In this document: piece after piece, positions 5,491 through 52,507 of the stretch
Layout of the letters: every line of letters starts with the position of its first letter
How positions within the stretch are numbered: the stretch's first letter is position 1
IMG/VR virus record: IMGVR_UViG_3300011113_000805
Location: 1 to 64,000 of that record
Length of the DNA stretch: 64,000 bases
Reading direction: 5' to 3' (one strand)
The notes under the pieces: generated by a model
Seen by the model: the letters and a program-made list of their open reading frames with translations, nothing else
What the model was told of the DNA's origin: nothing
The model's database searches: none
Program-made: the position numbers and the translations under genes

Positions 5491-7308
5491 TCACTCAACG
5501 GTAACAGATTTTGCAAGATTTCTTGGCCTATCGATATCCTTGCCAAGAATTCTTGCTGTCTCATATGCAATAAGCTGAAGTGGAACAACAGTAACTAGAG
5601 GTGTGATGAGATGATGAGCCAGGTGTGGAACCTTGATAATATGATCAGCAATGCCTGCTAATGTCCCATCACTAGAATCCGTGACAATGATAATTTTGGC
5701 ACCTCTTGCCTTTGCCTCAATGATATTGGAGAGTGTTTTCTCGAACCAGCGATCCTGTGGGATTACAGCGACAACAGGTGTCTCACAGTCTATCAAAGAG
5801 ATGGGACCATGTTTCATCTCCCCTGCAGGATATCCAAATGATGGAATGTAAGATACCTCCTTGAGTTTAAGCGCCCCTTCACATGCAACAGGGGCCGAGA
5901 CACCTCTGCCAATAAAGAAAACTTGTCGGGCACATGATATCACCTTAGCGACATCAAGGGTCCTGTAATAATCATCACTTGAGAACCACTCTTGCAATAA
6001 GAATGGTGTCTGCAGTAATGAGCTTGCAAGGTGTGATCGCTGTTCATAAGAAAGCCCTCGAGACTTGCCAAAGTATAGTGACATTAGTACTAGGGCGGTG
6101 ACTTGTGATGTGAACGCCTTTGTGGAGGCAACAGACATTTCAGGTCCTGAGTGGATATAGATGCCATTCCCACATTCACGAGCGATAGTGGATCCTACGG
6201 AATTAACTATGCCGGTCGTTAGGGCCCCACGCTCGCGAGCCATTCTCATTGCATGAATTGTATCAGCAGTTTCACCAGATTGTGTAACACCCACAAAGAG
6301 ATCGCAAAGATCTATTTGTGGTGTTCGATATCGAAGTTCGGAGGCAATCTCAGCAGATGCCCTAAGACCGGCAAGTTCCTCTAAAGCATGAACACCTACC
6401 TGTGAAGCATAGTGCGATGTTCCACAAGAAACAAGGCTAACATGGTTAAGACTTGCAATCTGCGCTGGTGTTAAGGAAATGCCGCCAAGTTTCGCTCCAT
6501 CATGCACAATCCTTCCTGCAAGGCACCTCTCCATAGAGACAGGCTGTTCCCAAATCTCCTTCAGCATAAAGTGAGGAAATTCACCCATCTCACCAAGGCT
6601 TGATGTGTCAGGGACTGTCTCAGCATGCCTCTCAACCCGACCAGCAGGAATAAAAACCTCGTATCGATCTGGCCAGATAGAGGCGATATCACCGTCCTCG
6701 AGGTAGACGATATCACGTGTGTACTGAGATATTGCGGATGGATCACTTGCAATAAATGATTCATCCTTTCCAATCCCAATAATGAGCGGTGAGCCATTTC
6801 TTGCTAGCAATAACTGCTCGCTTCCCTGCATTGCAACTGCAATGCCCCAGGTACCTCGAAGCCTCATGACTGCCTGTCTAAATGCTTCCAGAGGAGAGGC
6901 ATCACGAAGATAGTGCCTGATAAGGTGAGGAATCACCTCGGTATCAGTCTCGGAAAGAAACTTTATGCCGATTGCTTCAAGTTCATTCCGGAGAGTGGAA
7001 TAGTTCTCGATAATGCCATTGTGAACAACAGCAATTTTTTGCTTGATATCAAAGTGAGGATGTGTATTAGGAATTGTCACACCACCATGTGTTGCCCACC
7101 GTGTATGGCCAATCCCTGTTCTTCCCTTACGAGCAGGAAGTTCTGCGAGATTTTTCACCTGTCCTAATGCCTTGCTATGATGAATCTTTTCACCAGAAAC
7201 AATGGCGATTCCGGCACTGTCATACCCACGATACTCCAGTCTTCGAAGGCCCTCGAGAAGAATGGGTGATGCCTGCTTTTTGCCTGTGTAACCTACAATT
7301 CCGCACAT
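5491..7308 (-). CDS. glmS: Glutamine-fructose-6-phosphate aminotransferase
   Basis: MCGIVG start at 7308 with SD GAGG; EYRGYDSAG, GHTRWATHG, QSGETAD, C-terminal DRPRNLAKSVTVE. Confidence 0.97.
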   Translation of the reverse strand: MCGIVGYTGKKQASPILLEGLRRLEYRGYDSAGIAIVSGEKIHHSKALGQVKNLAELPARKGRTGIGHTRWATHGGVTIPNTHPHFDIKQKIAVVHNGIIENYSTLRNELEAIGIKFLSETDTEVIPHLIRHYLRDASPLEAFRQAVMRLRGTWGIAVAMQGSEQLLLARNGSPLIIGIGKDESFIASDPSAISQYTRDIVYLEDGDIASIWPDRYEVFIPAGRVERHAETVPDTSSLGEMGEFPHFMLKEIWEQPVSMERCLAGRIVHDGAKLGGISLTPAQIASLNHVSLVSCGTSHYASQVGVHALEELAGLRASAEIASELRYRTPQIDLCDLFVGVTQSGETADTIHAMRMARERGALTTGIVNSVGSTIARECGNGIYIHSGPEMSVASTKAFTSQVTALVLMSLYFGKSRGLSYEQRSHLASSLLQTPFLLQEWFSSDDYYRTLDVAKVISCARQVFFIGRGVSAPVACEGALKLKEVSYIPSFGYPAGEMKHGPISLIDCETPVVAVIPQDRWFEKTLSNIIEAKARGAKIIIVTDSSDGTLAGIADHIIKVPHLAHHLITPLVTVVPLQLIAYETARILGKDIDRPRNLAKSVTVE

Positions 7309-7344
7309 GATGTGATTATCCTCGCTTTGATTTGTTTGTTCAAT

Positions 7345-7384
7345 TAAATAACAAATGCCCAGGTTGAATATCCAACCTGGGCAT
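7345..7384 (-). terminator. Hairpin, probable intrinsic terminator
   Basis: Perfect 12-bp stem atgcccaggttg (7355-7366) / caacctgggcat (7373-7384), T-rich tail on the minus strand. Confidence 0.6.
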
Positions 7385-7402
7385 GTCTGTTGCAAATTTT
7401 AC

Positions 7403-9247: not shown

Positions 9248-11291
<2,044 letters not shown>

Positions 11292-25431: not shown

Positions 25432-26919
25432 ATGAGCAAAAGACTCTTCGAAGACAAGTTCAAGCGCGAGACAGGAAAGCGTTTCACAGATGATCTTCAG
25501 AAAATAAAGGACGCTGTTGACAAGGAAAAATTTTTCGTTCATTTCACCGACACGCCTAAAATAGGAATCAATCCAAGAAGCACTTTCCTTCCAGGACTCT
25601 ACGCTTATCCGCTTACTCGGGAAATCTATGAGAAGTTTGTTATCTCAGTGGACGAGTACGCAAGAGGACAAGGCAGGGCAGGAAGATATGTTTTTCTACT
25701 AAAAATAAAACCTGATGCAAAAATCATTGAGGGAAAAGAGTTGGAGGGGAGAATTGTCAAGAACTTTGCGTATTGCATTGCTCCCTTGCTGGATAATAAT
25801 CTTGTAATAGCAGTTCCTAAGAATCGATATCTCGGCCATGAAGAAGTCGCAGAGCTTATTGAAACACACTATCGAGATGATATTATGCTCGGGTTGGAAC
25901 GAATTCGTTCTGAACTCAAAAGAATTGAGTTTCGCATCAACAAGAGATCAGCCAAACTTGCAGCCTTAAAGACCGTTCTAAGAGAAACGGCACCTGATGC
26001 CGGAGAATTACCAGAATGGATTAACGAGAAACTTTGGGATGGATCAAAGGAATCTAAGAGAAACATACAAAAACTAACATTGGATCATATCACAAATGAT
26101 GAGTTGGCAAGTGGGAAGCTTGCAAGTGCAATTTACACTTACAAAGATCATCCCATTACAGCCGGCATTCGAAACAGTGTTGTTATCTCTAATGACATAA
26201 TAGCACTGCAAAATCTTGCAAATCACAGCTATTCTGGGGCTGCAACAAAAAGATGGGATGTCCTAAGAGACCTATTTGTCTTTGACAAGAAGATGAACAC
26301 AGCATCGTTCATTCGAACAAAGAGCGGTGAAAGAAAGGAAATGAAGCAAATCGTTAATGAATGCCTTGAGAGAACCGTGCAGATAATGAAAATCTCTAAG
26401 GAGAAGCTATTGCAGATTCTGAAACAAGATTCTGTTGGAACAAATATACTGCTAGGTCTAGGTGATGCCAATGTCCTCATAGATACTGGCATCGATGTCA
26501 GAAATACAGCAGCCGGCTGGGGTGGAATTCTAGGCGACCTTGAAGCAGCTCAGGCATACATCAGACCTCCGATCGGAAAATCAATAGAGGTCATAGCGAT
26601 GGTGGATCGATTTGAAGGTGATCCTGACAGTAAAACACCACCTGGCACTAGTACTCCCGATAAGGACTATGGAAAAGTTGCCGACGAAGAATGGAGAGAT
26701 TGGGCGGCAGGTCGGGAATCTAGTGCCAGGGATTTGTCACCTCGTGCTCTGGCACTCAATAAGAAATTCCTGGGCAAAGGATATCAGCAGGCAAAATACG
26801 ATAGGGACAATCGACTTATAAGGCCCGGAAAGGAATCGCCTACCGAGAGATGGAAGGATGCCAAGCTGGAAATGATTGTCAGAGACTGCATTAGGGAAAT
26901 GATCTTCTCCAAGAATTAG
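25432..26919 (+). CDS. Hypothetical protein (possible divergent ART-like fold)
   Basis: SD GAGG and CATATTTA upstream; FVHFT..KIGINP..GLYAYP; C-terminal IVRDCIREMI. Confidence 0.6.
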   Translation: MSKRLFEDKFKRETGKRFTDDLQKIKDAVDKEKFFVHFTDTPKIGINPRSTFLPGLYAYPLTREIYEKFVISVDEYARGQGRAGRYVFLLKIKPDAKIIEGKELEGRIVKNFAYCIAPLLDNNLVIAVPKNRYLGHEEVAELIETHYRDDIMLGLERIRSELKRIEFRINKRSAKLAALKTVLRETAPDAGELPEWINEKLWDGSKESKRNIQKLTLDHITNDELASGKLASAIYTYKDHPITAGIRNSVVISNDIIALQNLANHSYSGAATKRWDVLRDLFVFDKKMNTASFIRTKSGERKEMKQIVNECLERTVQIMKISKEKLLQILKQDSVGTNILLGLGDANVLIDTGIDVRNTAAGWGGILGDLEAAQAYIRPPIGKSIEVIAMVDRFEGDPDSKTPPGTSTPDKDYGKVADEEWRDWAAGRESSARDLSPRALALNKKFLGKGYQQAKYDRDNRLIRPGKESPTERWKDAKLEMIVRDCIREMIFSKN

Positions 26920-27974
26920 ACATCAATGTACTTCATTTGATGTACATTAGTGGATGTTCCCCAGGAGGGATCGGACTTCACGTTGGCTAGCCAGATGCTA
27001 TATGGGACAAGTTTCGATCCTCGATTTCCCCACACACGAAGCCAAGTCACCTGCATAGTTGTATCTGTCACCTTGAGGCGCATGAAGGGCTTACCATTCT
27101 TTGTCTGCTTCTCCTCCACCTGAAGGACACAGAACCAGCAGACATCCTCACCACCAGAAGAAAGCTCAGCAATAGGTGGAAGTTCTGCCTGCCGAATACG
27201 GGCCATGATCTCATCAGGAAAGATAATGTGATGGGGTGCTGAACCTGAAGTCTCCACCTGTTGTTGAACTTTTTGTGTCCGATCCCAGTCATCAATGTGC
27301 CTGACAGTCTCGATGAGTTCCAGGAGAATCGGTGGCGCATTGGCCTTTGCCGCCTTTCGCGGGTTCATGCCCCACCGACCCTTCTTCAGGGTGCCGTAGT
27401 TGCCGATGATAATCTCATGAAGTTGTCGATGATTAAGAAGGCGACCGTCCTGAAACTCTTCCAATGTTCCAAAGGCCTCCATAAAGAGGAGTGATTCGAG
27501 GCAGCTCCTATTCACCTTTGTGTGCCTCCACTTACCTTCAGAATCAAAGAGAAGCTCATCCAGGTTTCGATAGGGCCTATTCTCAAGGATTTCGGAGACA
27601 GCCGTGTCACCAACTCGCTTTAGAGATGAGAGCGGAGGAACGAATGCCTGTAAATCATTGGACCAGCTCCAGACATCACCAGAAGTATTGATGTCTGGTG
27701 GTGAGATTTTGTAGCCCATTTGCTTGATCTCTGAGACTACCACAGAGAGACCTTCAACATTTCCACTTTCTGACTGCAGGCAGGTTGCAAGCCAATCAGT
27801 TTCATAGTGTGTCATTAGCCATGCACCATAATAGGAGTCAATGGCATATGCAACCGAGTGAGAATTTGAAGTCAAAAGGCCGTTTGCAAGATAAAACTGG
27901 TGATCCGGATGATCCACTTCAAGGTCATAGGTCTGGTGTTCGCCGATGCTCTTGTAGGACTTAACTTTTGCCAT
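26916..27974 (-). CDS. dnaE: DNA polymerase III alpha C-terminal part fused to a split C-intein (27864-27974)
   Basis: MAKVKSYKSIGEHQTYDLEV...ANGLLTSN|SHSVAYA; PPDINTS, LKRVGD, OB-fold TKNGKPFM. Confidence 0.9.
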   Translation of the reverse strand: MAKVKSYKSIGEHQTYDLEVDHPDHQFYLANGLLTSNSHSVAYAIDSYYGAWLMTHYETDWLATCLQSESGNVEGLSVVVSEIKQMGYKISPPDINTSGDVWSWSNDLQAFVPPLSSLKRVGDTAVSEILENRPYRNLDELLFDSEGKWRHTKVNRSCLESLLFMEAFGTLEEFQDGRLLNHRQLHEIIIGNYGTLKKGRWGMNPRKAAKANAPPILLELIETVRHIDDWDRTQKVQQQVETSGSAPHHIIFPDEIMARIRQAELPPIAELSSGGEDVCWFCVLQVEEKQTKNGKPFMRLKVTDTTMQVTWLRVWGNRGSKLVPYSIWLANVKSDPSWGTSTNVHQMKYIDV

Positions 27975-28929
27975 AATCTTCACCTATAAGAATAAGCCCT
28001 GTTGATTTTTCAGTAAGGGCACTTAGAATTTGTGTAATACAGGATTCTTTGAATTTGCCCTTTTGAAATTCTGAGTGAGAAACCCTAATTACGGTATACC
28101 CTTTCTTTGTCAAGGCTTCATTTAATATTAAATCAGACCGCCTTATGTTTTCAAGTTTCTCAGCTCCGAATATTGGCAAAAAGTGAACAGGACCATCAAA
28201 TTCTACCACCACCTTCAACAGCGGATCCATGATATCGATTTGTCGTCTCTTCGAAATCGTGTTAAACGATACATCAAATATTCTTTGATTTTTACGAAAC
28301 CCAACATGATGTTTGCTAAGCATGTCAAATAAGGCTTTTTCAGGATAGCTTTGCTTAACAGCATGCATTCTCATAGTGCATTTCGAATAAAATTCTTCAG
28401 GATTGGAAGATCTCCACTTTGCAAGTGCAATTGTTCTTGCATGAAGAATTTCAGGTTTGTTTGAAGTAACTCTTGCTACACGTGATGATCTTTCACGACT
28501 TTTTTCACTCCTATTAAGATTGGACAAATTTTCACTTCTTGCCTTAATGGCACTAGGTGACCTTCGAATGCCTGATGATTTTGCTTCACCATGGCCGGCC
28601 CCATTTATTTTCCCAGCACTACTGTACTTTTTAACACATTCGTCTGCTGCAATTTGACCAGTATAGTCTTTCTTGGTAATGCCATGAGATTTTCTTAGGT
28701 GACGAGTTAAGATTCGAAACTTTTCTCCGCATATAAGGCAGACAACAAAATCCTTTCCTTCAGTTAGAGAAATACATTTCTCGCATGAAAGAACATGTGA
28801 CCAGAATATTGAGTTTTCCCTTAGGAAAGATCTTCCGCAGTCACAACAATTTCCAAGTCTTCCTGAATGATTTTCCAGATTGGAAGCATCTGACCGCAAG
28901 TTGTCCTGAATTTGTGATCCATCGTGCAT
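27961..28929 (-). mobile_element. Vsr-like/DUF559 homing endonuclease between the dnaE split-intein halves
   Basis: Zinc finger CLICG...HLRKSH; IDIMD...VVEFDGPVH...D...GYTVIRV; overlaps both dnaE parts out of frame. Confidence 0.8.
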
Positions 28930-31742
28930 CGAACTTTTTCTCCTGTATCAAGCTCAAACTCGTGCAGCTCTAAGACACCATGGTCATGCTTTGCACGAAC
29001 CTGAACAAACAAGTCTTTTCCTGTTGATTCTTCACGAGACTTAACAAAGCAACCTGGGGTGATGTCCTTGAGCATCAAAGTTTCAATAAACTCACCATTA
29101 TGTGAATACGTATGTACCTCTTCCTCAAAGTGACAAGTTTTATTGAAGCCATAAAGTGAGAAGTACGCGATGGTATCAAAGAGGTCCTGGGCTTGCTTTG
29201 GTGTCAATCCGGATTTCTCAATACAGCCGGAGACAAACTTCTTCTCCAGTGCCTCCTTCTCCTCAGACTTCTTACCAAGTGAGGTAAGATCTTTCTTCAC
29301 CAGAGTCTTTCGCATCTTGTCAGAGTCACCAGGTGAGAAACCTGCGAGTTTCTGAGCAAGTACCATGAATTGTTCCTGGAACACAATAAAGCCGCATGTG
29401 GGGCCCAGGACTTCTTCGATAACAGGATGATCGTACTTGATGGCATCTCGATTCTGCTTTGCCTCCACATATTTTTTGTGCACATTGGCTTTCAAAGGAC
29501 CGGGGCGATAGATCGCCGTAATGGTGGAGAGGTCGATAATATTCTCAGGCTTTGCTGCCACACAGAACTTTCGAGCTCCATCTGATGTGAACTGGAAGAT
29601 GCCTGACCAACGACCCTCCTGATAGACATGCCTGAAGACTTTTGAATCATTAGGCTCCACATAGCGACAATTGAGCTTCTGATCATAGAAGTCTTTTACT
29701 TCGACAAAGGTGGGATCTCGACCAAGCTCTCGGAGGAGGATTCGACGAATGCAGTCCTCCACCATTTGCATTTGCTTCAGGCCCAAGAAATCAAACTTCA
29801 GAAAGCCGTTCTCTTCCAAGTTTCGAATATTGACACCTTCGGTCCACGGTGTCTGGAGTTCTCCCTTTACCGTGATGAGAGGCATGTGCTTCTCAAGTTC
29901 TGGGCAGATGAGGACGCCGCCAGCATGTCGACCAACAGATCGATTCATCATGAAGAGTGATCGCACCTTGTCTTGTACCTGAGGATACTTCTCCATAAAC
30001 TCACGGTATCGAGGTGAGTGCTCCATACAGTCCTCGTGCTTCAGAACAAACATGGACTTCTCCATGTTAGGATCACGGGATTTCTCGGCAACCTCACGTT
30101 CAAGGGGTCCGGTGACGGCATTGACTTCATCGAAGGGAACACCGTAGAACTTGGAGACATCTTTTACCAGTGACTTCAGCTTCAGGGTATTGAAGTTGGA
30201 GACCGGCACCACTGATTCCTCACCGAAGATCTCACGTGCCGCCTCAATGAGCTTATCACGATCACCGACATCAGTGTCAATATCTGGCCAAGATGCCTTC
30301 TGCCGAGAGAGAAACCGCTCCCAGAGGAGATCATACTTAATAGGATCCACGTGTGTGATACCAAGGAGATAGTTCACAAGGGAGCCTGCGCCACTTCCGC
30401 GGCCGGCGCCTGGAAGGGTCCTGTTCTCGGCGACCTTAAAGACTTTCTCCAAGGTAAGAAAGTAGTCCTCAAACTTGAGGAACTTGATATCACCAAGCTC
30501 CATTTTTGCACGTTCGATATAGACAGGATCCTTGTGGAGTCCTTCCTCAATGAGTCGCTCCTTCACGATCTGTGTCAATTGACTCATCCCGGTCTGCTCA
30601 GGTGTGTTGAACTTTGGAAGCTTTGCGCTACCATCAAACCATACCTGCTGACATTGCTCCCAAACAATATCGTGTGACCGCTCGATGGCATCTCGGACTC
30701 TCTCCTCGTTGCCACGGTAGAAGCTATTGTCCGGGATAAGGCTCACGAACTCGTCCCAGATCTCATTCGCATTCTTCGGATAAAGCTCAGCCTTCAGATC
30801 TGTCCTCAGTGGGAGGACAGGTGCTGTGCCATCATTCTTGATGCGACCGGGCTGAAGCTGACGATAGATCTCACGAGACTCCCAGAAGTCCGGACCTGGG
30901 TAGTGCGAGTCTGAAGTAACGATGAGTGGGACGCCAGTCTTCTGTGAAGCATCTAGAAGAAACCGATTCGTAAGATTCTGGGCAGGAAGCTTGTTGAACT
31001 GTAGCTCTAGGAAGAAATTATCGCGACCAACAGCATCAGTAAAGCGATCCACCATATTTCCAAGACGTCCCAGGATACGATTACGACCAGCTACTCCTGC
31101 GACATCATAGAGATCAGGTGTCAGCTCGGAGAACTTCTTGTCAGGAAACTCTCGAAAGATATTTCCAGAGGCGAAACCGCCTACACAGGCCGTGCTGACA
31201 ATAAGGCCGCGACCATGTTCCCGAAGCATCTGAAAGTCGATTCGAGGAAACTTATAGAAACCCTCACGGAAAGATCGCTTCACCAGTGTAAAGAGATTTG
31301 CCAGGCCCTCATTGTCACGTGCCACCACCACTATGTGGTAGCGTCGATTAATGTTATCAACAACATCGGAGGATCGAGTCTCATCGGCATCCTCCACCAC
31401 AAGGCGACCATTGCCGTCCTCGTCAACAAGGGACTCCTCCTCCTGGCTCATTCCTGACTTGGAGAGGGCATATGCCTTTCGCCACTCATTGAGATCCGGA
31501 ACAAAGTAGAACTCAACACCAAAGAGCTGTCGAAAGTGCTTTCCTTTGGTGATGAGCTTTTTTGCGTGAGCATGAGCATGAGCAAGACCATTGCCATTGC
31601 CATGATCTGTCAGGGTCCAAGAGTCAAGTCCATTGGAGATACTGAAGTCGATGTGATCGGAGGGCTGCCCAAATCCATCGTAAGGTGAAAAATGGCTATG
31701 ACCATGAATGGAGGCATATCGACGAGGAGGTTGGATGATCAT
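28821..31742 (-). CDS. dnaE: DNA polymerase III alpha N-terminal part fused to a split N-intein (about 28821-29138)
   Basis: PHP HGHSHFS..DG/TDHG, GRGSGAGSL, PDIDTD, KFDFLGL, YGFNK, then a Hint N-half with CTMDHKF. Confidence 0.93.
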   Translation of the reverse strand: MIIQPPRRYASIHGHSHFSPYDGFGQPSDHIDFSISNGLDSWTLTDHGNGNGLAHAHAHAKKLITKGKHFRQLFGVEFYFVPDLNEWRKAYALSKSGMSQEEESLVDEDGNGRLVVEDADETRSSDVVDNINRRYHIVVVARDNEGLANLFTLVKRSFREGFYKFPRIDFQMLREHGRGLIVSTACVGGFASGNIFREFPDKKFSELTPDLYDVAGVAGRNRILGRLGNMVDRFTDAVGRDNFFLELQFNKLPAQNLTNRFLLDASQKTGVPLIVTSDSHYPGPDFWESREIYRQLQPGRIKNDGTAPVLPLRTDLKAELYPKNANEIWDEFVSLIPDNSFYRGNEERVRDAIERSHDIVWEQCQQVWFDGSAKLPKFNTPEQTGMSQLTQIVKERLIEEGLHKDPVYIERAKMELGDIKFLKFEDYFLTLEKVFKVAENRTLPGAGRGSGAGSLVNYLLGITHVDPIKYDLLWERFLSRQKASWPDIDTDVGDRDKLIEAAREIFGEESVVPVSNFNTLKLKSLVKDVSKFYGVPFDEVNAVTGPLEREVAEKSRDPNMEKSMFVLKHEDCMEHSPRYREFMEKYPQVQDKVRSLFMMNRSVGRHAGGVLICPELEKHMPLITVKGELQTPWTEGVNIRNLEENGFLKFDFLGLKQMQMVEDCIRRILLRELGRDPTFVEVKDFYDQKLNCRYVEPNDSKVFRHVYQEGRWSGIFQFTSDGARKFCVAAKPENIIDLSTITAIYRPGPLKANVHKKYVEAKQNRDAIKYDHPVIEEVLGPTCGFIVFQEQFMVLAQKLAGFSPGDSDKMRKTLVKKDLTSLGKKSEEKEALEKKFVSGCIEKSGLTPKQAQDLFDTIAYFSLYGFNKTCHFEEEVHTYSHNGEFIETLMLKDITPGCFVKSREESTGKDLFVQVRAKHDHGVLELHEFELDTGEKVRCTMDHKFRTTCGQMLPIWKIIQEDLEIVVTAEDLS

Positions 31743-46529: not shown

Positions 46530-47531
46530 CTACTTGCAACGACTCCACCCGCAAGAGGAACACGATAGGCATCCCTCTTGGTAGATGAGATCTCCGTTGC
46601 CACACTCCGGACATCCCTTTTCACTTGACTTAGTGCCATCCTTAATATACCCCTTGAGAACCCTAGCAATTACCTTTGCAAATGAGAACATATCACTGTT
46701 TTTATCCTTTTGCAGCTGCTCAACGACGTAATGAATTGGAACATTGTGACGTAAAGCAAGTGAGATTGTTCGCGTGAATGCACCCTGTGTTGAATTGTCG
46801 AAAAGTGTGACAATATCCTTGAAGACTAGATTGTCATCATCACCGACTGGAACGAGGAGATTGTATGTAGTAACTCCTTCACGCTTACCATTTTTAACCA
46901 ATGTGCCTGACTTGTATCGCTTTGGAATCTCAATATTTTCAGGAATGCCACAAAATACCTCGTAGGGCTTCCCCTCATTGAGTCCCACCAGAATGAGCCA
47001 AGATGTTCCTCCAATATTTGCTCTATGAATATCGCACTCTAGGGTCTTTGGCCTCTTTGGTGTGAGACGACCGTCAGCAAGGGGTTTTGGCTGGACTGTC
47101 TTGGGCTCTTCAGACTGCACTAAGACACCGGTTCTGCAACCGTCACGATAGACCGTAAATCCCTTGCACCCAGACTTCCATGCCTGAAGATAGACGTCAT
47201 TAACGGTCTCACGAGTCGCTGAGTTGGGGAGGTTGCAATTATGAACCGTAAAACCATTTGCTGAAAATGAATTCCCATCAGGAACTGTTAAATCATAAGT
47301 TCTTTCATTTCCTAGCATTTCAATTGAAAGAATCTCATCGAAATCATCGGCTGTTTTGGATTCATCAAGCCATCGCTTAAGCGTCCAATATCCGGGATTT
47401 TTAATATCTGATTCATTCAGATGCGCGGTAAGTAATAAAAATTTTGCCGCTTCCTGTTTGTTTACTCGAAATTCACGAGGAATTCGAACTTCTGCATTCT
47501 TACAGATAACTTCTACAGCCAAGTCTTGCAT
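46530..47531 (-). CDS. nrdJ: Class II RNR C-terminal part fused to a split C-intein (47238-47531)
   Basis: TYDLTV...SANGFTVHN|CNLP...GCKGFTVYRDG; PYEVF domain; terminal CPECG...EGC..C..CGWSRC. Confidence 0.9.
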   Translation of the reverse strand: MQDLAVEVICKNAEVRIPREFRVNKQEAAKFLLLTAHLNESDIKNPGYWTLKRWLDESKTADDFDEILSIEMLGNERTYDLTVPDGNSFSANGFTVHNCNLPNSATRETVNDVYLQAWKSGCKGFTVYRDGCRTGVLVQSEEPKTVQPKPLADGRLTPKRPKTLECDIHRANIGGTSWLILVGLNEGKPYEVFCGIPENIEIPKRYKSGTLVKNGKREGVTTYNLLVPVGDDDNLVFKDIVTLFDNSTQGAFTRTISLALRHNVPIHYVVEQLQKDKNSDMFSFAKVIARVLKGYIKDGTKSSEKGCPECGNGDLIYQEGCLSCSSCGWSRCK

Positions 47532-48574
47532 TATAACCTTCCCAGTATTTTAAGCAGATCTTCATTAAAGATCTCGGTTTCAGTAAGAACATGAAAGTTT
47601 TGGCCAAGAACATCTCTTGCTGCCGAAATTTTCAAGGCATTAACATGCTCACACACTTTTTTAAGTGGCTTTATTTCTAGAACAATTGTACTACCTATAG
47701 CATTGACAAATGCTATATCAGGATAGTAGTGCCTTCTTGAATTGCTTATCATATACTGAATTCTTTCAGGTGTTATTACTCTTTGAATTCTACATTGTCC
47801 AAGAAGATTGTCTAAAGCTTCAAAAACTTTTTTCTCCCATGATGATCTATAAAAAAACTTATCGTTTTCCTGATTGTTCATTCTATACCACCCCTTCTCA
47901 GAGTTCTTATATCCATTCTTATCAGATTCTAAAGAAGATCTAGAGAACCTATTTGATAGATACTCACTATAAAGTGAGTCTATTGCGTCAGGAGTAAGTT
48001 CATCAATATTTTTAATGTGCATATGCAATAGAATGTGCTTCATTTTCCAAGCATGAGTATTCTTCACTCTAAAGTTTTTGTAAGCTTCTTTAGTAATCTG
48101 CTTTCTCTTGTTGTCAGAGAAATTTTTGCTATATGCAATTCCAAGCATTGAACATGCTGATTTAAGAACCCTTTCCTTGTCAGCCAACTTTATTGCATCA
48201 TGATTGCCATATTTTTTAAGCCTTCCTATTGCTATCTTTTCTGAGTGGTTTGATAGATTTTTGAATTCGCGTGCCCATAATTCTAACACATCACTATCAC
48301 ATAATCCATCGAAAGGAATGTCATGTGATATCAAAAAGTTTTTTGCACGTGTTATTTTGCTTGATTTACCATTCCTAGAAAAATCACCTGTTTCTCTTAT
48401 CTTTCTGATTCTTAATGTGTCACCATGCATTCTTCTGTTATGATAATCAGGTGTTGCCTTAAAACATTTTAATGAACAGCAGCCATGCTTCATACTAACA
48501 GATTTCGAAATTATACTGTCCATTTGATCGACAATTTTATTGCAAACTTTGCATTCGAATGTTGTTCTAGGCAC
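47531..48574 (-). mobile_element. TnsA-like PD-(D/E)xK endonuclease between the nrdJ split-intein halves
   Basis: CxxC..CSLKC; YRSSWE...I.Y....RHYYPD......LEIKP; AT-rich. Confidence 0.75.
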
Positions 48575-48615
48575 TTTCTACTCCACAGGATCTACATATG
48601 CCATGGAGTAGAAAG
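48574..48615 (-). promoter_or_regulatory. RBS-sequestering hairpin with an ATAnnTA motif in the loop
   Basis: 12-bp stem 48574-48585/48604-48615 covers the SD GGAG and the first base of GTG; CATATGTA in the loop. Confidence 0.75.
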
Positions 48616-48618
48616 AAA

Positions 48619-51120
48619 TTATGATAACTTAACTCTGTCACCGATATTAATGTCCTTTAATTCTGCCCATGCCTCAAGACCATCATCATCGTTAAGCAAA
48701 ATAAACTTATGATCTAGTGTTGTTTTGATGCTTAATCCGGATTTTGTGGTCACACGATAAACCGGCTTAACACCTTGATCTGAGACAAATCCAATCATTG
48801 CTAAACGGCCATGATGATTAACCGTCATGAGGTCACTAACAGTTGCCGAACTTTCAGATTGACAGTTAGAAAGCTCGGCAATTTCATCGGCATAAAGCAA
48901 CCCACTATCTGTTTCAACAAGAGAATCACCTGATACACAAGTTTTAGAAATTGAGTGATCAACCCATCGCTGGGCAGCCGCTTGAATCTTTACCGAATTT
49001 ACCCAGTCAATGTCATTTGCAGTTGCACCCCAATATGGACTTTCCTGAGGATCTGACTTACCCGTGATATCCATCCACTTTTTGAACCAATGATGATAGA
49101 CAGTATATTCCTGCCACTTATCACCCATTGGATCCACAAAATCAACTCGGGATGTGATATCACCCTGCGTGATCTTTCGACGACGTTTATAGGAGAGCAG
49201 GAATGCTGGTTCAATTCCGGATGTTGTCTGGGTTAGGATGGAAACAGATCCTACAGGTGCTGTGGTTGTGAGGGCAATATTACGACGACCCGATGTGCGC
49301 CACATCTCGAGGGCACCTGGTGACTCAGTCTCGACTACCTGCATAATCTTGCCAAGGTAGCTATGTCCTTTCTCTTTCTCCCAGTCCCAGACAGGGAAAG
49401 CACCACGCTCGTGTGCCATCACTAGTGAGGAGTAGTGAGACCAGGTGGCCAGTGATTTGTAGATCTTCTCAGTAACCGCAATAGACTCCTCTGAGCCATA
49501 CCGAAGTCCTAGTGCTGCCAGGGCATCACCAAGGCCCGTGATCCCAAGTCCTGTCCTGCGACCATTGCTACCGGCAGCACGAATCTTCTCCCAGAGATCC
49601 TGTTCAATCTGCTTCACATGCTTGGGCTGTGGATCGTTCTTGATTTTCTCCAGAATGCGATCGACACACTCGACCTCAAGATCAACAAGGTCATCCATTA
49701 GGCGCTGTGCATCCTGAGTGACAGTTGCAAACTCATCAAAATTGAAACTTGCATTTGGCGTAAATGGGTTTCGAATGAATGAGGTGAGATTGATCACCAT
49801 CAGGCGGCAAGAGTCATATGGGCTGAGCGGGATTTCTCCACAATTGTGAACCAGAATATCATTTGCAAAGAAATTATGTACATCATCAACGGTTAGATCA
49901 TAAACATCTTCATTTTTTACCGCTGAGATGTCTTGAATTTCATCCCATTCTGTATTAATTTTGAGAATTTTATCACTAGTTTGAAGCTCGCCCGCCTCAA
50001 TCCAGCCTCTCTGTGTAAAAACTCTGTGATCAGGAGTTAGCTTAATTGATTTACCACTCTTTGTGGTAAGTTGCAGAATTTTTGCATCTTCCTTTGTTTT
50101 GAAAGCAGTCGCTGTTTTCTGTACAACCTTATTTTCCTTAATGTCATATGCACAAACCATAAACTGTGCATTATTATCTGCAAGTTCTTTAACAGTCTTT
50201 GGTCCTGCATTTGTTTTTACAACTGTGTCACCGGTGACACACGGATTCGTTGAGATTGTCTTGTATCCGACATCCCTATAGCAATCGACAATGCCTTCAT
50301 TGACCACCGTATCCCAGAAAAGAGCTCCAGGTTCAGCAGATGCCCAGGCAGCATCAATAAACTTCTCCCAAACTTGCCTTGCATTGACCACGCGTGTAAT
50401 CTCAGCATCTTCAGGAGCTGCCTCTACGGGCCATCGAAGAGTAAAGTCCTCGCCCTTCTCAACCGCCCGCATAAACTCATCAGTAAATCTGATTGAGATA
50501 TTTGCACCGGTAACTTTCTTAAGGTCACGCTTGATGTCAATAAATGTTTCAAGCTCAGGATGATTACAATGAACGGTTAGCATCAGGGCCCCACGCCGGC
50601 CGCCTTGAGCAACTTCCCGTGTAGAGTTGGAGAAGCGCTCCATAAAGACACCGATACCATCAGTCGTCCGGGCCGCATTGGTTGTTGGTTGTCCCTTTGG
50701 ACGAATGGTGGAGATGTCAAAGCCAACGCCTCCGCGGCGCTTCATAATCTGCACCTGTTCCTGATCGCTGAAGAGGATGCCGCCGTAGGAGTCGTGAGGC
50801 TGATCAATAACAAAACAGTTGGAAAGTGACTGAAGCTGATGAGGATTGCCAATTCCTGACATTGGCGATCCCTGAGGGACTACTTGGGCAAATCCCGTGA
50901 GGAGACTCAGGATTCTTTCCTCACTGAGTGGGTTTGGATACTTTGCCTCGATCCTCGCAAACTCCTTTGCAAGCCGTGTATGTAGCTGCCCAGGATCGGT
51001 CTCTAGCAAGTCACCCTGATGATTCCTGAGAGCGTACTTCAGAAAGACATCCGGTGCAAGCTCATCACCGCCAAAGGCCTCACGAAGGTGTTCAAGAACG
51101 CTTTGATTTTTGTTACTCAT
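48619..51120 (-). CDS. nrdJ: Class II RNR N-terminal part with a cis mini-intein and a split N-intein (48619-48939)
   Basis: SLSNCFV, GGVG, RRGALM, EPGA, TNP|C..HN|CGE, RRTGLG, APVGS, SISKT|CVSGD...TTLDHKF. Confidence 0.93.
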   Translation of the reverse strand: MSNKNQSVLEHLREAFGGDELAPDVFLKYALRNHQGDLLETDPGQLHTRLAKEFARIEAKYPNPLSEERILSLLTGFAQVVPQGSPMSGIGNPHQLQSLSNCFVIDQPHDSYGGILFSDQEQVQIMKRRGGVGFDISTIRPKGQPTTNAARTTDGIGVFMERFSNSTREVAQGGRRGALMLTVHCNHPELETFIDIKRDLKKVTGANISIRFTDEFMRAVEKGEDFTLRWPVEAAPEDAEITRVVNARQVWEKFIDAAWASAEPGALFWDTVVNEGIVDCYRDVGYKTISTNPCVTGDTVVKTNAGPKTVKELADNNAQFMVCAYDIKENKVVQKTATAFKTKEDAKILQLTTKSGKSIKLTPDHRVFTQRGWIEAGELQTSDKILKINTEWDEIQDISAVKNEDVYDLTVDDVHNFFANDILVHNCGEIPLSPYDSCRLMVINLTSFIRNPFTPNASFNFDEFATVTQDAQRLMDDLVDLEVECVDRILEKIKNDPQPKHVKQIEQDLWEKIRAAGSNGRRTGLGITGLGDALAALGLRYGSEESIAVTEKIYKSLATWSHYSSLVMAHERGAFPVWDWEKEKGHSYLGKIMQVVETESPGALEMWRTSGRRNIALTTTAPVGSVSILTQTTSGIEPAFLLSYKRRRKITQGDITSRVDFVDPMGDKWQEYTVYHHWFKKWMDITGKSDPQESPYWGATANDIDWVNSVKIQAAAQRWVDHSISKTCVSGDSLVETDSGLLYADEIAELSNCQSESSATVSDLMTVNHHGRLAMIGFVSDQGVKPVYRVTTKSGLSIKTTLDHKFILLNDDDGLEAWAELKDINIGDRVKLS
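49843..50241 (-). mobile_element. Cis mini-intein (133 aa, no endonuclease) at the RNR active-site NPCGE
   Basis: CVTGDT...TPDH...VYDLTV..HNFFAN..VHN|C. Confidence 0.92.
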
Positions 51121-51121
51121 G

Positions 51122-52507
51122 TCACTTTGCTCCCATAACTTGTTTCCACTTCTCTCGCAGGACATTCTTCCTGCTATTGTCATCCTGGGTTATTGCTTCC
51201 TGTAAGGTGAGCTCACCCTCATCTAGAACTTTAATGGTAGAACGAGCCGTGTCAATGTGAATAGGAAAAAGAATGCCATCACGTCCTGCTCGATTCTTTG
51301 CTACAAAAAGCCTTCCCATTCCTGTGGCCTTTTCGGCAGGCTTTCGGGAGAGAGAGAGGACCACGTCAGCCACCATTGCCTTGCCATAGGACTCTGACAT
51401 ATTCTCAAGGCCAACAATGTCAGAATTTGAGGAGTCACGATTTGCCTGGGATGCCGTCCAGATGGGAATGTTTTTCTCCATTGCCAGGTTTCGAAGCTCC
51501 TCATAAATAAGCTTAAGCTCAAGTCTTAGGGCATCATACTCTCGCGATGATCGCATAATATCAGCATAGTCGATGAGAATCAGATTAGGAACAAATCCTC
51601 TCAACGAGAGCTTCTCGAGGTGATTTCGAAGGGTATTGACAGTTGCCGTGCCTGTAGGATACTCCTTGATGATGAGCTTGCCTAGCTCCATATCCTTGTA
51701 CTTGTCCATTACCTCCTGCTTTGAGTCCTGGATCTCGTTGGACGGGATCTCAGTCAGGTGAGAGTCATAGCGAATGCCAACCGCTGTCTCAGTGAGCTCA
51801 AACGTATAATGAACAACATTCTTTCCTCGTTTCAGGGCGTTTGCTCCCAAGGAGACAAGCATATGGCTCTTGCCGACACCGGTATTTGCAGCAATAACCC
51901 CTAGCTCACCGCGACCAAGGCCTCCATTAAGGACTGTCTTCTCGTCAAGCTGATCAATACCGGTAGGACATGCAGCGCGATTGATCTTAACAAAACGAGC
52001 TTCAGCATCCTCAAAGAAGTCATGACCAACAGATGTGGGCAGGCCTACGGAGACTGCCTTGCGCATAAGATCAACGACGGCATCATACTTGTCACCTGAA
52101 ATAAGTTCGACAGATTTCTCAAGTGCCTCACGAAGGGCTTGCTTCCTGCAAAAATCAAGCGCCTTATCCTTCACATATGCAATGTCACCCATGTCAGGTG
52201 AGTGACGCATACGACCCAGGTACTCTACAATTTGCTCCTTAAGGACAGCATTGCTTGGCTCACGCAGCTCATCCTTGATGATGGAGATGAGCAAGGAGAG
52301 AGTCGGAAACGAGCGATACTTGCCATTGTACTTGAAGTACTTGTCACTGAGGTAAGCAAGGTATTTCAAGTCAAAGTAGTTTGGTTGCATCACCTCTGAC
52401 ATTTGTGCGGCCCAGGTATGATCGGTCAGGAGGCCCTGGAAGATCTTTTCCTGAAAGGGTTTGCCATACTGCTTGAATAACGCTTCACCGGGACTATTGT
52501 CAGACAT
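51122..52507 (-). CDS. DnaB/gp41-like replicative helicase
   Basis: ANTGVGKS, IIKEYP, IDYAD, WTASQANR, KNRAG. Confidence 0.92.
   Translation of the reverse strand: MSDNSPGEALFKQYGKPFQEKIFQGLLTDHTWAAQMSEVMQPNYFDLKYLAYLSDKYFKYNGKYRSFPTLSLLISIIKDELREPSNAVLKEQIVEYLGRMRHSPDMGDIAYVKDKALDFCRKQALREALEKSVELISGDKYDAVVDLMRKAVSVGLPTSVGHDFFEDAEARFVKINRAACPTGIDQLDEKTVLNGGLGRGELGVIAANTGVGKSHMLVSLGANALKRGKNVVHYTFELTETAVGIRYDSHLTEIPSNEIQDSKQEVMDKYKDMELGKLIIKEYPTGTATVNTLRNHLEKLSLRGFVPNLILIDYADIMRSSREYDALRLELKLIYEELRNLAMEKNIPIWTASQANRDSSNSDIVGLENMSESYGKAMVADVVLSLSRKPAEKATGMGRLFVAKNRAGRDGILFPIHIDTARSTIKVLDEGELTLQEAITQDDNSRKNVLREKWKQVMGAK

What the first reader, a model, noticed from the sequence alone, without database searches (positions are those of the whole stretch)
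29115..29150. The DnaE N-intein appears to start with Thr rather than Cys/Ser
Seen: the junction reads YGFNK-TCHFEEEV and the C-extein starts SHSVAY. Restoring the conserved FNKSH requires excision from Thr. Block A spacing (residue 8 = V/I, as in CVTGDTVV and CVSGDSLV in this window) also fits T1-C2-H3...V8. It lacks the class 3 B12 Trp and F4 Cys. The alternative is Cys1, leaving an extra Thr (FNKTSH). The same 10-mer TAAAACTTGT (K-T-C) occurs at the nrdJ split junction near 48937-48946. A natural Thr1 class 1 intein would be very unusual.
Basis: partly seen in the sequence, partly recalled or inferred. Interest (0 to 1): 0.66.

Follow-up and report, generated by a model that had tools for sequence, protein, structure and literature searches.

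The report
Split DnaE intein starting with threonine
The only DNA polymerase III alpha gene of this jumbo phage is cut in two by a split intein whose first residue is threonine, not the usual cysteine or serine; the only explicit statement I found (a 2010 paper) says no natural intein begins this way, and the state is conserved in several related phages.

Summary
On the minus strand, DnaE-N reads YGFNK|TCHFEEEV (Thr codon ACT, 29136-29138) and the C-half reads ...LLTSN|SHSVAY.

- An uninterrupted orthologue of 1183 aa is colinear with both exteins and joins K868 directly to S869, in protein and in DNA.
- 48 distinct inteins at this same site begin right after FN(K/R) with Ser (30), Cys (11) or Thr (7). 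Residue 2 is usually Leu or Val. One Thr1 allele has Leu2, so Cys2 is not the family's nucleophile.
- Every partner C-half reads ...SN|SH(S/A).
- The seven Thr1 alleles use ACT, ACC and ACA. Within the TCHF clade synonymous sites are saturated (pS 0.66-0.85) while pN is 0.15-0.24.
- All Thr1 alleles keep block B TxxH and the (K/R)HDHG motif of their Ser1 relatives. The four with a recovered C-half also keep block F Asp, terminal Asn and Ser+1.
- Class 3 signatures are absent.

The nearest solved relatives are the cyanobacterial Npu and Ssp DnaE split inteins. Tori et al. (2010) state that Thr1 had not been seen in natural inteins but that an S1T mutant splices. I found no later report.

That Thr1 is the nucleophile is inferred, not shown. 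The shared 10-mer at the nrdJ junction is coincidental.

The parts
29139..31742 (-). DnaE N-extein (residues 1-868; PHP, polymerase core and finger domains), ending YGFNK
   Evidence: PF02811, PF07733, PF17657. Residues 800-868 are colinear with intein-free P0024 800-868.
29136..29138 (-). ACT codon for Thr869, which is intein residue 1 (the proposed N-terminal nucleophile)
   Evidence: It is the first inserted codon relative to the empty site in L066. It aligns with Ser1 or Cys1 of 41 allelic inteins.
28824..29138 (-). N-intein fragment, 105 residues (TCHFEEEV...TAEDLS); stop codon at 28821-28823
   Evidence: phmmer matches Npu and Ssp DnaE split inteins with E about 3e-10.
28977..28991 (-). 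K50-H51-D52-H53-G54, an NX-like motif shared by all Ser1 and Thr1 alleles of this site
   Evidence: The motif is described for Ser1 inteins in PMC10189870.
28914..28925 (-). Block B (N3): T72-M-D-H75, followed by K76-F77 (B12 is Phe, not Trp)
27961..28929 (-). Free-standing putative homing endonuclease ORF between the two halves (Ros/MucR-type zinc finger plus a weak DUF559/Vsr-like C-terminal part). The true start is uncertain because the ORF overlaps the last 36 codons of the N-intein ORF.
   Evidence: PF05443 1.1e-8; PF04480 0.0014, below its cut-off. The layout matches the 'fractured genes' of PMC2677866.
27864..27974 (-). C-intein fragment, 37 residues (MAKVK...YDLEVDHPDHQFYLANGLLTSN). 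Block F4 is Asp, the penultimate residue is Ser and the last is Asn.
   Evidence: The predicted complex with the N-intein scores ipSAE 0.76 against 0.13 for the best control.
26916..27863 (-). DnaE C-extein starting with Ser+1 (SHSVAY...), 315 residues plus stop
   Evidence: It is colinear with P0024 869-1183. PF14579 HHH_6.
48937..48946 (-). Second copy of TAAAACTTGT, at the nrdJ split-intein junction (SISKT|CVSGDSLV). Here the Thr is the last extein residue. It is a comparison point only, not part of the DnaE element.

Best explanation
This is a naturally split class 1 intein in a 'fractured gene' layout: DnaE-N plus N-intein, then a free-standing endonuclease gene, then C-intein plus DnaE-C. 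It sits at the FNK|SHS site of the phage's only DnaE polymerase, and its first residue is Thr rather than Ser or Cys.

Proposed mechanism:
1. The 105-residue N-fragment and the 37-residue C-fragment associate into a HINT fold.
2. The hydroxyl of Thr1 attacks the Lys(-1) carbonyl (N-O acyl shift). It is helped by block B Thr72 and His75 and by the (K/R)-His motif that this clade shares with Ser1 inteins.
3. Ser+1 takes over the N-extein by transesterification.
4. The terminal Asn cyclises.
5. An O-N shift yields uninterrupted ...YGFNK-SHSVAY....

What is shown: the boundaries (Thr is the first inserted residue), membership in a Ser1/Cys1/Thr1 allelic family related to the cyanobacterial DnaE split inteins, retention of all catalytic motifs, and purifying selection.

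What is inferred: that splicing occurs and that Thr1 is the acting nucleophile.
For: - Boundaries. The intein-free orthologue P0024 (1183 aa) aligns to the N-extein up to K868 and to the C-extein from S869 with no gap. The DNA empty site agrees.
- Allelic series. 48 distinct N-inteins at this site have residue 1 = Ser 30, Cys 11, Thr 7. Residue 2 = Leu/Val/Ile in 37 and Cys in 11. One allele is Thr1-Leu2 (P0017/L001). The alignment has no gap in block A.
- Partner C-halves. All those recovered read ...SN|SH(S/A), or HN|SH in one cis form.
- Selection. Thr codons are ACT (window, L050, L001), ACC (L048, L051, L064) and ACA (L065). In the four-member TCHF clade, pS is 0.66-0.85 and pN 0.15-0.24 in the N-intein, giving omega of about 0.07-0.16 where dS could be estimated.
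- Motifs. All 7 Thr1 alleles and 26 of 30 Ser1 alleles carry (K/R)HDHG (29 of 30 Ser1 have the His). None of the 11 Cys1 alleles has the full HDH. This matches the (K/R)-His NX motif reported as specific to Ser1 oxyester inteins (PMC10189870).
- Class 3 signatures are absent: B12 is Phe and F4 is Asp.
- Homology. Npu and Ssp DnaE split inteins match with E about 3e-10.
- Predicted N/C complex. ipSAE is 0.76 (three runs, 0.75-0.82) against 0.13 for the best of three controls. That mark was reached by 51 of 78 solved complexes and 2 of 108 mismatched pairs. The runs agree in at least 89% of contacts and the partner's pLDDT is at least 66. Contacts include residues 867-872 with C-half residues 29-41, so both junctions meet. 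The pass may reflect memory of solved DnaE inteins.
- The genome record holds only this one DnaE.
- In L048 the Thr1 intein persists without an endonuclease gene between the halves.
- Chemistry. The S1T mutant of the Tli Pol-2 intein splices (cited in PMC2807308).
Against: - There is no biochemical evidence. Splicing and the identity of the nucleophile are inferred from sequence alone.
- Thr is a secondary, beta-branched alcohol. According to the one paper that states it (2010), it had never been observed at position 1.
- Six of the seven Thr1 alleles have Cys at position 2, against 5 of 41 others (Fisher p = 2e-4, not corrected for phylogeny). This leaves room for some role of Cys2.
- The only Thr1-Leu2 allele is a singleton contig with no close Thr relative.
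- A single origin of all Thr1 alleles is not formally rejected (AU p = 0.064), so independent recurrence is not established.
Confidence: 0.8

Rival explanations
1. Register shift. Cys2 (C870) is the true first intein residue and nucleophile (thioester chemistry). Thr869 stays in the polymerase, giving FNKT-SHS.
For: Cys is by far the commonest intein nucleophile. Six of seven Thr alleles have Cys at the next position, against 5 of 41 others. The same K-T-C string marks a normal Cys1 junction at nrdJ in this window.
Against: The colinear intein-free orthologue has no residue between K868 and S869. None of about 50 intein-free homologues has an extra residue in FN(K/R)SH. Allelic inteins with Ser-Leu, Ser-Val and Thr-Leu have no Cys2, and the alignment is gap-free, so Cys2 occupies the normally hydrophobic position 2. 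Cys2 also occurs behind Ser1 (SCHF, SCAY) and Cys1 (CCTV, CCTF). The block A spacing (V/I/L at position 8) would be off by one. The Thr alleles keep the Ser1-type (K/R)HDHG motif that the Cys1 alleles lack.
Confidence: 0.06
2. Thr1 is a bystander. The intein splices by a class 2-like route in which Ser+1 attacks the Lys(-1) peptide bond directly, or by another internal nucleophile.
For: Inteins without an N-terminal nucleophile exist in classes 2 and 3 (PMC2807308). Thr had not been reported at position 1.
Against: The class 3 Trp (B12) and Cys (F4) are absent. Position 1 in 48 alleles is only Ser, Cys or Thr, never Ala, Pro or Gly, which argues that a nucleophilic side chain is required. Three synonymous Thr codons show selection for Thr itself. 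The motif linked to Ser1 activation is retained.
Confidence: 0.06
3. The Thr1 intein no longer splices. The two DnaE pieces either work as a non-covalent complex held by the intein halves or are decaying.
For: C1 and S1 substitutions often inactivate inteins (PMC10189870). Nothing here measures splicing.
Against: The insertion lies inside the invariant FNKSH motif of the finger domain. The Thr1 clade shows saturated synonymous divergence with strong constraint on the intein, and TxxH and (K/R)HDHG are intact in all seven alleles. Block F Asp, terminal Asn and Ser+1 are intact in the four alleles whose C-half was recovered. Both exteins are 81-97% identical to an uninterrupted orthologue with no frame damage. 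It is the only DnaE in the record.
Confidence: 0.06
4. Assembly or sequencing error at one base of a Ser (AGT or TCT) codon.
For: ACT is one substitution from AGT or TCT. Reads could not be examined.
Against: Six further distinct alleles from independent samples encode Thr here with ACT, ACC or ACA.
Confidence: 0.01

Closest known systems
Cyanobacterial DnaE split inteins (Npu DnaE, Ssp DnaE)
   Same: They are the best sequence matches among solved structures (E about 3e-10), with ...HD.G...(21 residues)...T.DHKF.T..G.MLPI..I shared. Both are naturally split at the endonuclease position and both host proteins are DnaE. From my own knowledge, the Npu and Ssp C-fragments also end in Ser-Asn.
   Different: From my own knowledge, those inteins have Cys1 and Cys+1, sit a few residues upstream (before CFNKSH), and have their halves at distant loci without an endonuclease gene. 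Here residue 1 is Thr and +1 is Ser, the site is FNK|SHS, and the halves are adjacent with an endonuclease ORF between them.
'Fractured genes' of marine and freshwater metagenomes (Dassa et al. 2009, PMC2677866), including three DnaE loci
   Same: The layout is the same: N-half with N-intein, a free-standing (Vsr-like or GIY-YIG) endonuclease ORF, then C-intein with C-half, all on one strand in phage-like replication genes. The nrdJ gene in this window is fractured in the same way.
   Different: That paper describes Cys1 as the N-terminal catalytic residue of its split inteins. I could not check whether one of its three DnaE sites is FNK|SHS, because no supplement is held.
Ser1/Ser+1 'cysteine-independent' class 1 inteins with the NX motif (PolB16 OarG, Psp Pol-1; Pasch et al. 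2023, PMC10189870)
   Same: Oxyester chemistry is implied at both junctions. A (K/R)-His motif lies about 21 residues before block B, and a conserved Glu lies in the preceding strand (SRDE).
   Different: Residue 1 is Thr, not Ser. The intein is not cysteine-free (C2, C30, C71, C80). That K50-H51 is the structural equivalent of the NX His rests on spacing and sequence pattern, not on a structure.
Tli Pol-2 intein S1T mutant (cited in PMC2807308)
   Same: It shows that Thr at position 1 can support splicing in a Ser1 intein.
   Different: That is an engineered substitution in an archaeal cis-intein. Here Thr1 is natural and conserved.

Membership tests
Class 1 intein (HINT splicing domain) | Nucleophilic residue (Cys or Ser; Thr formally allowed) at intein position 1 | tested here: met
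   Thr869 is the first inserted residue and aligns with Ser1 or Cys1 of 41 alleles. Its chemical use as a nucleophile was not tested.
Class 1 intein (HINT splicing domain) | Block B (N3) Thr-x-x-His | tested here: met
   T72-M-D-H75. The Thr and His are near-invariant across the family (one allele has Ser for the Thr).
Class 1 intein (HINT splicing domain) | Block F Asp at F4; C-terminal Asn; Cys, Ser or Thr at +1 | tested here: met
   YDLEV...TSN|S. The same holds in all four Thr1 loci with a recovered C-half.
Class 1 intein (HINT splicing domain) | Penultimate His (G6) | tested here: not met
   The penultimate residue is Ser (TSN), as in nearly every allele of this site. This feature is not universal among active inteins. 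From my own knowledge, Npu and Ssp DnaE also end in Ser-Asn.
Class 1 intein (HINT splicing domain) | Sequence homology to characterised inteins | tested here: met
   phmmer against PDB: Npu and Ssp DnaE inteins, E 3e-10 to 1e-6. Pfam Intein_splicing is only weak in this intein (E 0.0097).
Class 1 intein (HINT splicing domain) | Demonstrated protein splicing | not testable with these tools
   Needs expression and mass spectrometry.
Naturally split intein in a fractured gene | Two ORFs on one strand, each carrying half an intein in frame with half the host protein, with a free-standing endonuclease ORF between | tested here: met
   The halves are predicted to pair: ipSAE 0.76 against 0.13 for the best control.
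Naturally split intein in a fractured gene | The intervening ORF is a Vsr-like or GIY-YIG homing endonuclease | tested here: inconclusive
   PF04480 DUF559 E 0.0014, 18.9 bits, below the 20.6-bit cut-off. The PF05443 zinc finger has E 1.1e-8.
Class 3 intein (WCT) | Trp at B12 and Cys at F4, with a non-nucleophilic residue 1 | tested here: not met
   B12 is Phe77, F4 is Asp and residue 1 is Thr. Only G5 Thr is present.
Class 2 intein (KlbA type) | No nucleophile at position 1 (Ala1); direct attack by +1 | tested here: not met
   Residue 1 is Thr. Across 48 alleles only Ser, Cys or Thr occur there. The mechanism itself is not testable here.
Ser1-type oxyester inteins with NX motif | (K/R)-His upstream of block B, with Ser or Thr at +1 | tested here: met
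   K50-H51 and Ser+1. All 7 Thr1 alleles have (K/R)HDHG. Structural equivalence to the published NX His is not verified.

The most novel reading that the evidence does not exclude
This is a natural lineage of class 1 inteins that uses Thr1 as the first nucleophile, a state said in 2010 never to have been observed. It is maintained under selection in several phage DnaE genes. Its almost constant companion Cys2 may be a co-adapted residue that helps the poorer, beta-branched nucleophile. Cys2 could do this by packing, or it could take part in acyl transfer.
Probability: 0.5. Interest if true: 0.7.

Novelty: new variant of a known kind. Interest (0 to 1): 0.62.

Why it matters
Textbook descriptions allow Cys, Ser or Thr at intein position 1. 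The only explicit statement I found (Tori et al. 2010) says that Thr had never been seen in nature and was known only from one engineered mutant.

A conserved natural Thr1 family would show that the N-O acyl shift from a secondary alcohol works under selection in an essential replication enzyme. This family comes with Ser1 and Cys1 alleles at the same site and with a close uninterrupted orthologue. That gives a ready-made comparative series (Cys1, Ser1 and Thr1 in one scaffold related to the well-studied Npu DnaE intein) for asking how the active site is tuned to each nucleophile.

It also adds candidates to the small set of split inteins that use oxyester chemistry at both junctions, which are wanted for protein ligation under oxidising conditions.

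Tried and rejected
- Isolate phage genomes: tblastn found only distant, intein-free DnaE hits below 60% identity, so this gave no help on the junction.
- JGI metagenome contig scan: only 3 further intein alleles.
- Search for a second Thr1-Leu2 allele around P0017: none found. Its nearest relatives (60-64% identity) are Ser1-Leu2.
- The 10-mer shared with nrdJ: rejected as meaningful. The flanks do not match. The two intervening endonuclease ORFs are unrelated. The two inteins are not similar. The DnaE relatives L048, L051 and L064 use ACC, which breaks the 10-mer.
- Independent origins of Thr1: the ML tree needs 4 changes and well-supported branches force at least 2. However, the AU test does not reject one clade for all seven (p = 0.064) or for the six Thr-Cys alleles (p = 0.37). 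I therefore do not claim recurrence.
- Supplement of the 'fractured genes' paper: not held, so I could not see whether its DnaE loci include this site.
- Literature searches for a natural Thr1 intein found no report after 2010. The library lacks most subscription journals, so absence is weak evidence.
The two exteins were compared with the orthologue separately, by reference.
- No 3D model of the active site was made. The tools do not return coordinates for the two-chain model, and a fused construct would not be an unaltered sequence.
Full report
**What is in the sequence**

The feature lies on the minus strand. ORF 31742..28821 (973 aa, P0001) carries the PHP, polymerase-core and finger domains of DNA polymerase III alpha. 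It reads ...AYFSLYGFNK-TCHFEEEVHTYSHNG.... The codons are AAA (K868) at 29141-29139, ACT (T869) at 29138-29136 and TGT (C870) at 29135-29133. The ORF continues for 105 residues after K868 and stops at 28823-28821.

Next comes an ORF (28929..27961, P0002) with a Ros/MucR-type zinc finger and a weak DUF559/Vsr-like C-terminal region.

Then comes an ORF whose Met4 opens MAKVKSYKSIGEHQTYDLEVDHPDHQFYLANGLLTSN|SHSVAYAIDSYY.... It carries the HHH_6 domain of the DnaE C-terminus.

This is the 'fractured gene' arrangement of Dassa et al. 2009 (PMC2677866). The nrdJ gene of the same window is fractured in the same way and also holds a cis mini-intein.

The window is the first 64 kb of a 257-kb IMG/VR virus record that contains only this one DnaE. 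Neighbouring genes include a DnaB-like helicase, RecA, a chaperonin and GlmS.

**Where the intein begins**

Three independent comparisons place the boundary between K868 and T869.

1. Empty site. P0024, an uninterrupted DnaE of 1183 aa from a freshwater metagenome, is 97% identical to P0001 800-868 over its own residues 800-868. It is 81% identical to the C-extein (P0005 41-355) over its residues 869-1183. There is no gap and no residue between K868 and S869. In DNA the orthologue reads TTCAATAAA|TCACATTCG, where the window reads TTCAATAAA|ACT TGT ... AAT|TCTCACTCG. The sum 868 + 315 = 1183 equals the orthologue's length exactly. I compared the two exteins separately and built no joined sequence.

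2. Motif length. All of about 50 intein-free homologues read FN(K/R)SH (one reads FCKAH), and none has an inserted residue.

3. Allelic inteins. Two protein word searches, an IMG/VR scan and a JGI scan gave 48 distinct N-inteins at this very site.
   - They align without a gap in block A.
   - They start immediately after FN(K/R, rarely L/N/A/S) with Ser (30), Cys (11) or Thr (7).
   - Residue 2 is Leu, Val or Ile in 37 and Cys in 11.
   - One allele (P0017/L001) is FNR|TLQLFEYV, that is Thr1-Leu2, with partner ...GVLTSN|SHAVSY.
   - Every recovered partner C-half reads ...SN|SH(S/A).

Residue 2 therefore cannot be the nucleophile of this family. Cys2 is simply one of the residues tolerated at a normally hydrophobic position; it also follows Ser1 (SCHF, SCAY) and Cys1 (CCTV, CCTF).

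**Is Thr1 maintained?**

Seven distinct alleles have Thr1:
- the window;
- L048/L049 (P0007), L050 (P0008) and L051 (P0009), which together with the window form a well-supported TCHF clade (99/96);
- P0081/L064 (TCHK);
- P0082/L065 (FNL|TCSY);
- P0017/L001 (TLQL).

Their Thr codons are ACT, ACC and ACA. Within the TCHF clade, synonymous sites of the N-intein are saturated (pS 0.66-0.85) while pN is 0.15-0.24. This gives omega of about 0.07-0.16 where dS could be estimated.

All seven Thr1 alleles keep block B T-x-x-H. The four whose C-half is on the contig also keep block F YDLEV, terminal Asn and Ser+1. In L048 the two halves are separated by only about 110 nt with no endonuclease gene. So the Thr1 intein persists even where its presumed homing partner is gone. 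A sequencing error or a recent inactivating mutation is thus excluded.

**Chemistry-related signatures**

On a tree built without the first two columns, the Cys1 alleles fall on one side of a branch. The Ser1 and Thr1 alleles form a supported clade (99/96).

All 7 Thr1 alleles and 26 of 30 Ser1 alleles carry (K/R)HDHG about 21 residues before block B, and 29 of 30 Ser1 alleles have the first His. None of the 11 Cys1 alleles has the full HDH. Pasch et al. 2023 (PMC10189870) describe a (K/R)-His 'NX' motif that is conserved only in Ser1/Ser(Thr)+1 inteins, lies within hydrogen-bond distance of Ser1 and is needed for splicing. The window's K50-H51, with the conserved Glu of SRDE/SREE in the preceding strand, fits that pattern. 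Structural equivalence is inferred from spacing only.

The Thr1 inteins therefore look like oxyester-type inteins, not like Cys-dependent ones. This argues again for Thr1 and against Cys2.

**Relatives and fold**

The nearest solved structures are the cyanobacterial Npu and Ssp DnaE split inteins (E 3e-10 to 1e-6).

A two-chain prediction of N-intein (residues 859-973) with C-intein (residues 4-62) scored ipSAE 0.76 (three runs, 0.75-0.82). The best of three controls scored 0.13. That mark was reached by 51 of 78 solved complexes and 2 of 108 mismatched pairs. The runs agree in at least 89% of contacts, and the partner's pLDDT is at least 66. Contacts include residues 867-872 with C-half residues 29-41, so the two splice junctions are brought together. 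Because similar complexes are solved, this pass shows likeness rather than proof of binding.

**Most likely mechanism**

The two fragments associate. The Thr1 hydroxyl makes the N-O acyl shift at Lys(-1), Ser+1 takes over the acyl group, Asn cyclises, and the O-N shift gives ...YGFNK-SHSVAY....

The boundaries, family membership, motif retention and selection are shown. The splicing itself and the role of Thr1 are inferred. Supporting chemistry comes from the literature: the S1T mutant of the Tli Pol-2 intein splices (cited in PMC2807308).

**Rivals**

- A register shift to Cys2 would leave FNKT-SHS. The empty site, the Leu2 and Val2 alleles and the Ser1-type motif all contradict it (about 6%).
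- A class 2-like route with Thr as a bystander is unlikely. Position 1 is only ever Ser, Cys or Thr, and Thr is kept through synonymous change (about 6%).
- A dead intein is contradicted by the strong constraint and by this being the sole DnaE (about 6%).
- An assembly error is excluded by six other alleles (about 1%).

**What remains unexplained**

Six of seven Thr1 alleles have Cys2, against 5 of 41 others (Fisher p = 2e-4). The six may be one lineage: the AU test does not reject a single clade (p = 0.37). The association may therefore be one historical event rather than a functional coupling. A C2A mutant would tell.

Whether Thr1 arose more than once is also open. The ML tree and its supported branches favour at least two origins, but holding all seven together is not rejected (p = 0.064). 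The lone Thr1-Leu2 allele has no close Thr relative.

**The 10-mer**

TAAAACTTGT occurs at both the DnaE and nrdJ junctions. The expected count is 0.11, and 1 of 100 shuffles gave at least two. It has no bearing on the question:
- At nrdJ the Thr is the last residue of the conserved extein motif (SISKT|C...N|CNLP).
- The flanks differ.
- The two endonuclease ORFs are unrelated.
- The closest DnaE relatives use ACC.

**Novelty**

Tori et al. [quoted passage not shown] Later papers in the held library mention Thr1 only as a formal possibility in the definition of class 1. Searches found no report of a natural Thr1 intein. The library lacks most subscription journals and curated intein databases, so a prior report cannot be excluded.

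I rate this as a new variant of a known kind. The mechanism was anticipated, but a conserved natural example in a clean allelic series with Ser1 and Cys1 forms appears to be undescribed.

**Limits**

No coordinates were available for active-site geometry. No experiment was possible.

Noticed in passing
window 46530-51183 (-): The class II ribonucleotide reductase (NrdJ) carries two inteins. One is a contiguous mini-intein (NPC|VTGDTVV...ILVHN|CGEIP). The other is a split intein (HSISKT|CVSGDSLV... and ...FTVHN|CNLPNS), with a 347-aa ORF of no Pfam family between the halves.
   Followed up: partly
L050:392-4618 (relative of the window's DnaE): In this Thr1 relative the DnaE N-part is itself broken once more upstream. 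A 575-aa piece, a 295-aa ORF and a 543-aa piece suggest a second fractured site in the same gene.
   Followed up: no
L048:5034-5145: The closest Thr1 relative has no endonuclease ORF between the two DnaE halves, only about 110 nt. The split intein has therefore outlived its presumed homing endonuclease.
   Followed up: partly
Alignment of 48 alleles: Intein-containing alleles tolerate Leu, Asn, Ala or Ser at the -1 position (FNL, FNN, FNA, FNS). Intein-free DnaEs have only Lys or Arg there. The Cys1 alleles also have Cys rather than Tyr before the block F Asp (CDLEV against YDLEV).
   Followed up: no
P0096, P0097, L017, L028: Contiguous (cis) versions of inteins at the same FNK|SH site exist, as Ser1 or Cys1 forms in DnaEs of about 1300 aa. 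Split and unsplit forms therefore coexist at this site.
   Followed up: no
Own genome outside the window, G000:C1 about 88811-89788 (-), locus L071: A 570-aa ORF appears to hold an intein with LAGLIDADG-type endonuclease motifs (...ALGE|CVPPGTEIL ... VVWTGN|CDHP...). The host may be a prohead protease or scaffold-like protein.
   Followed up: no
window 28821-28929: The longest reading of the endonuclease ORF overlaps the last 36 codons of the N-intein ORF in another frame. The homologous ORF in L001 starts 63 nt after the DnaE-N stop, so the true start in the window is uncertain.
   Followed up: no
window 9511-11118 (-) and 5491-7395 (-): The phage encodes a Cpn60/GroEL-type chaperonin and a GlmS-like glutamine-fructose-6-phosphate aminotransferase near the replication genes.
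   Followed up: no
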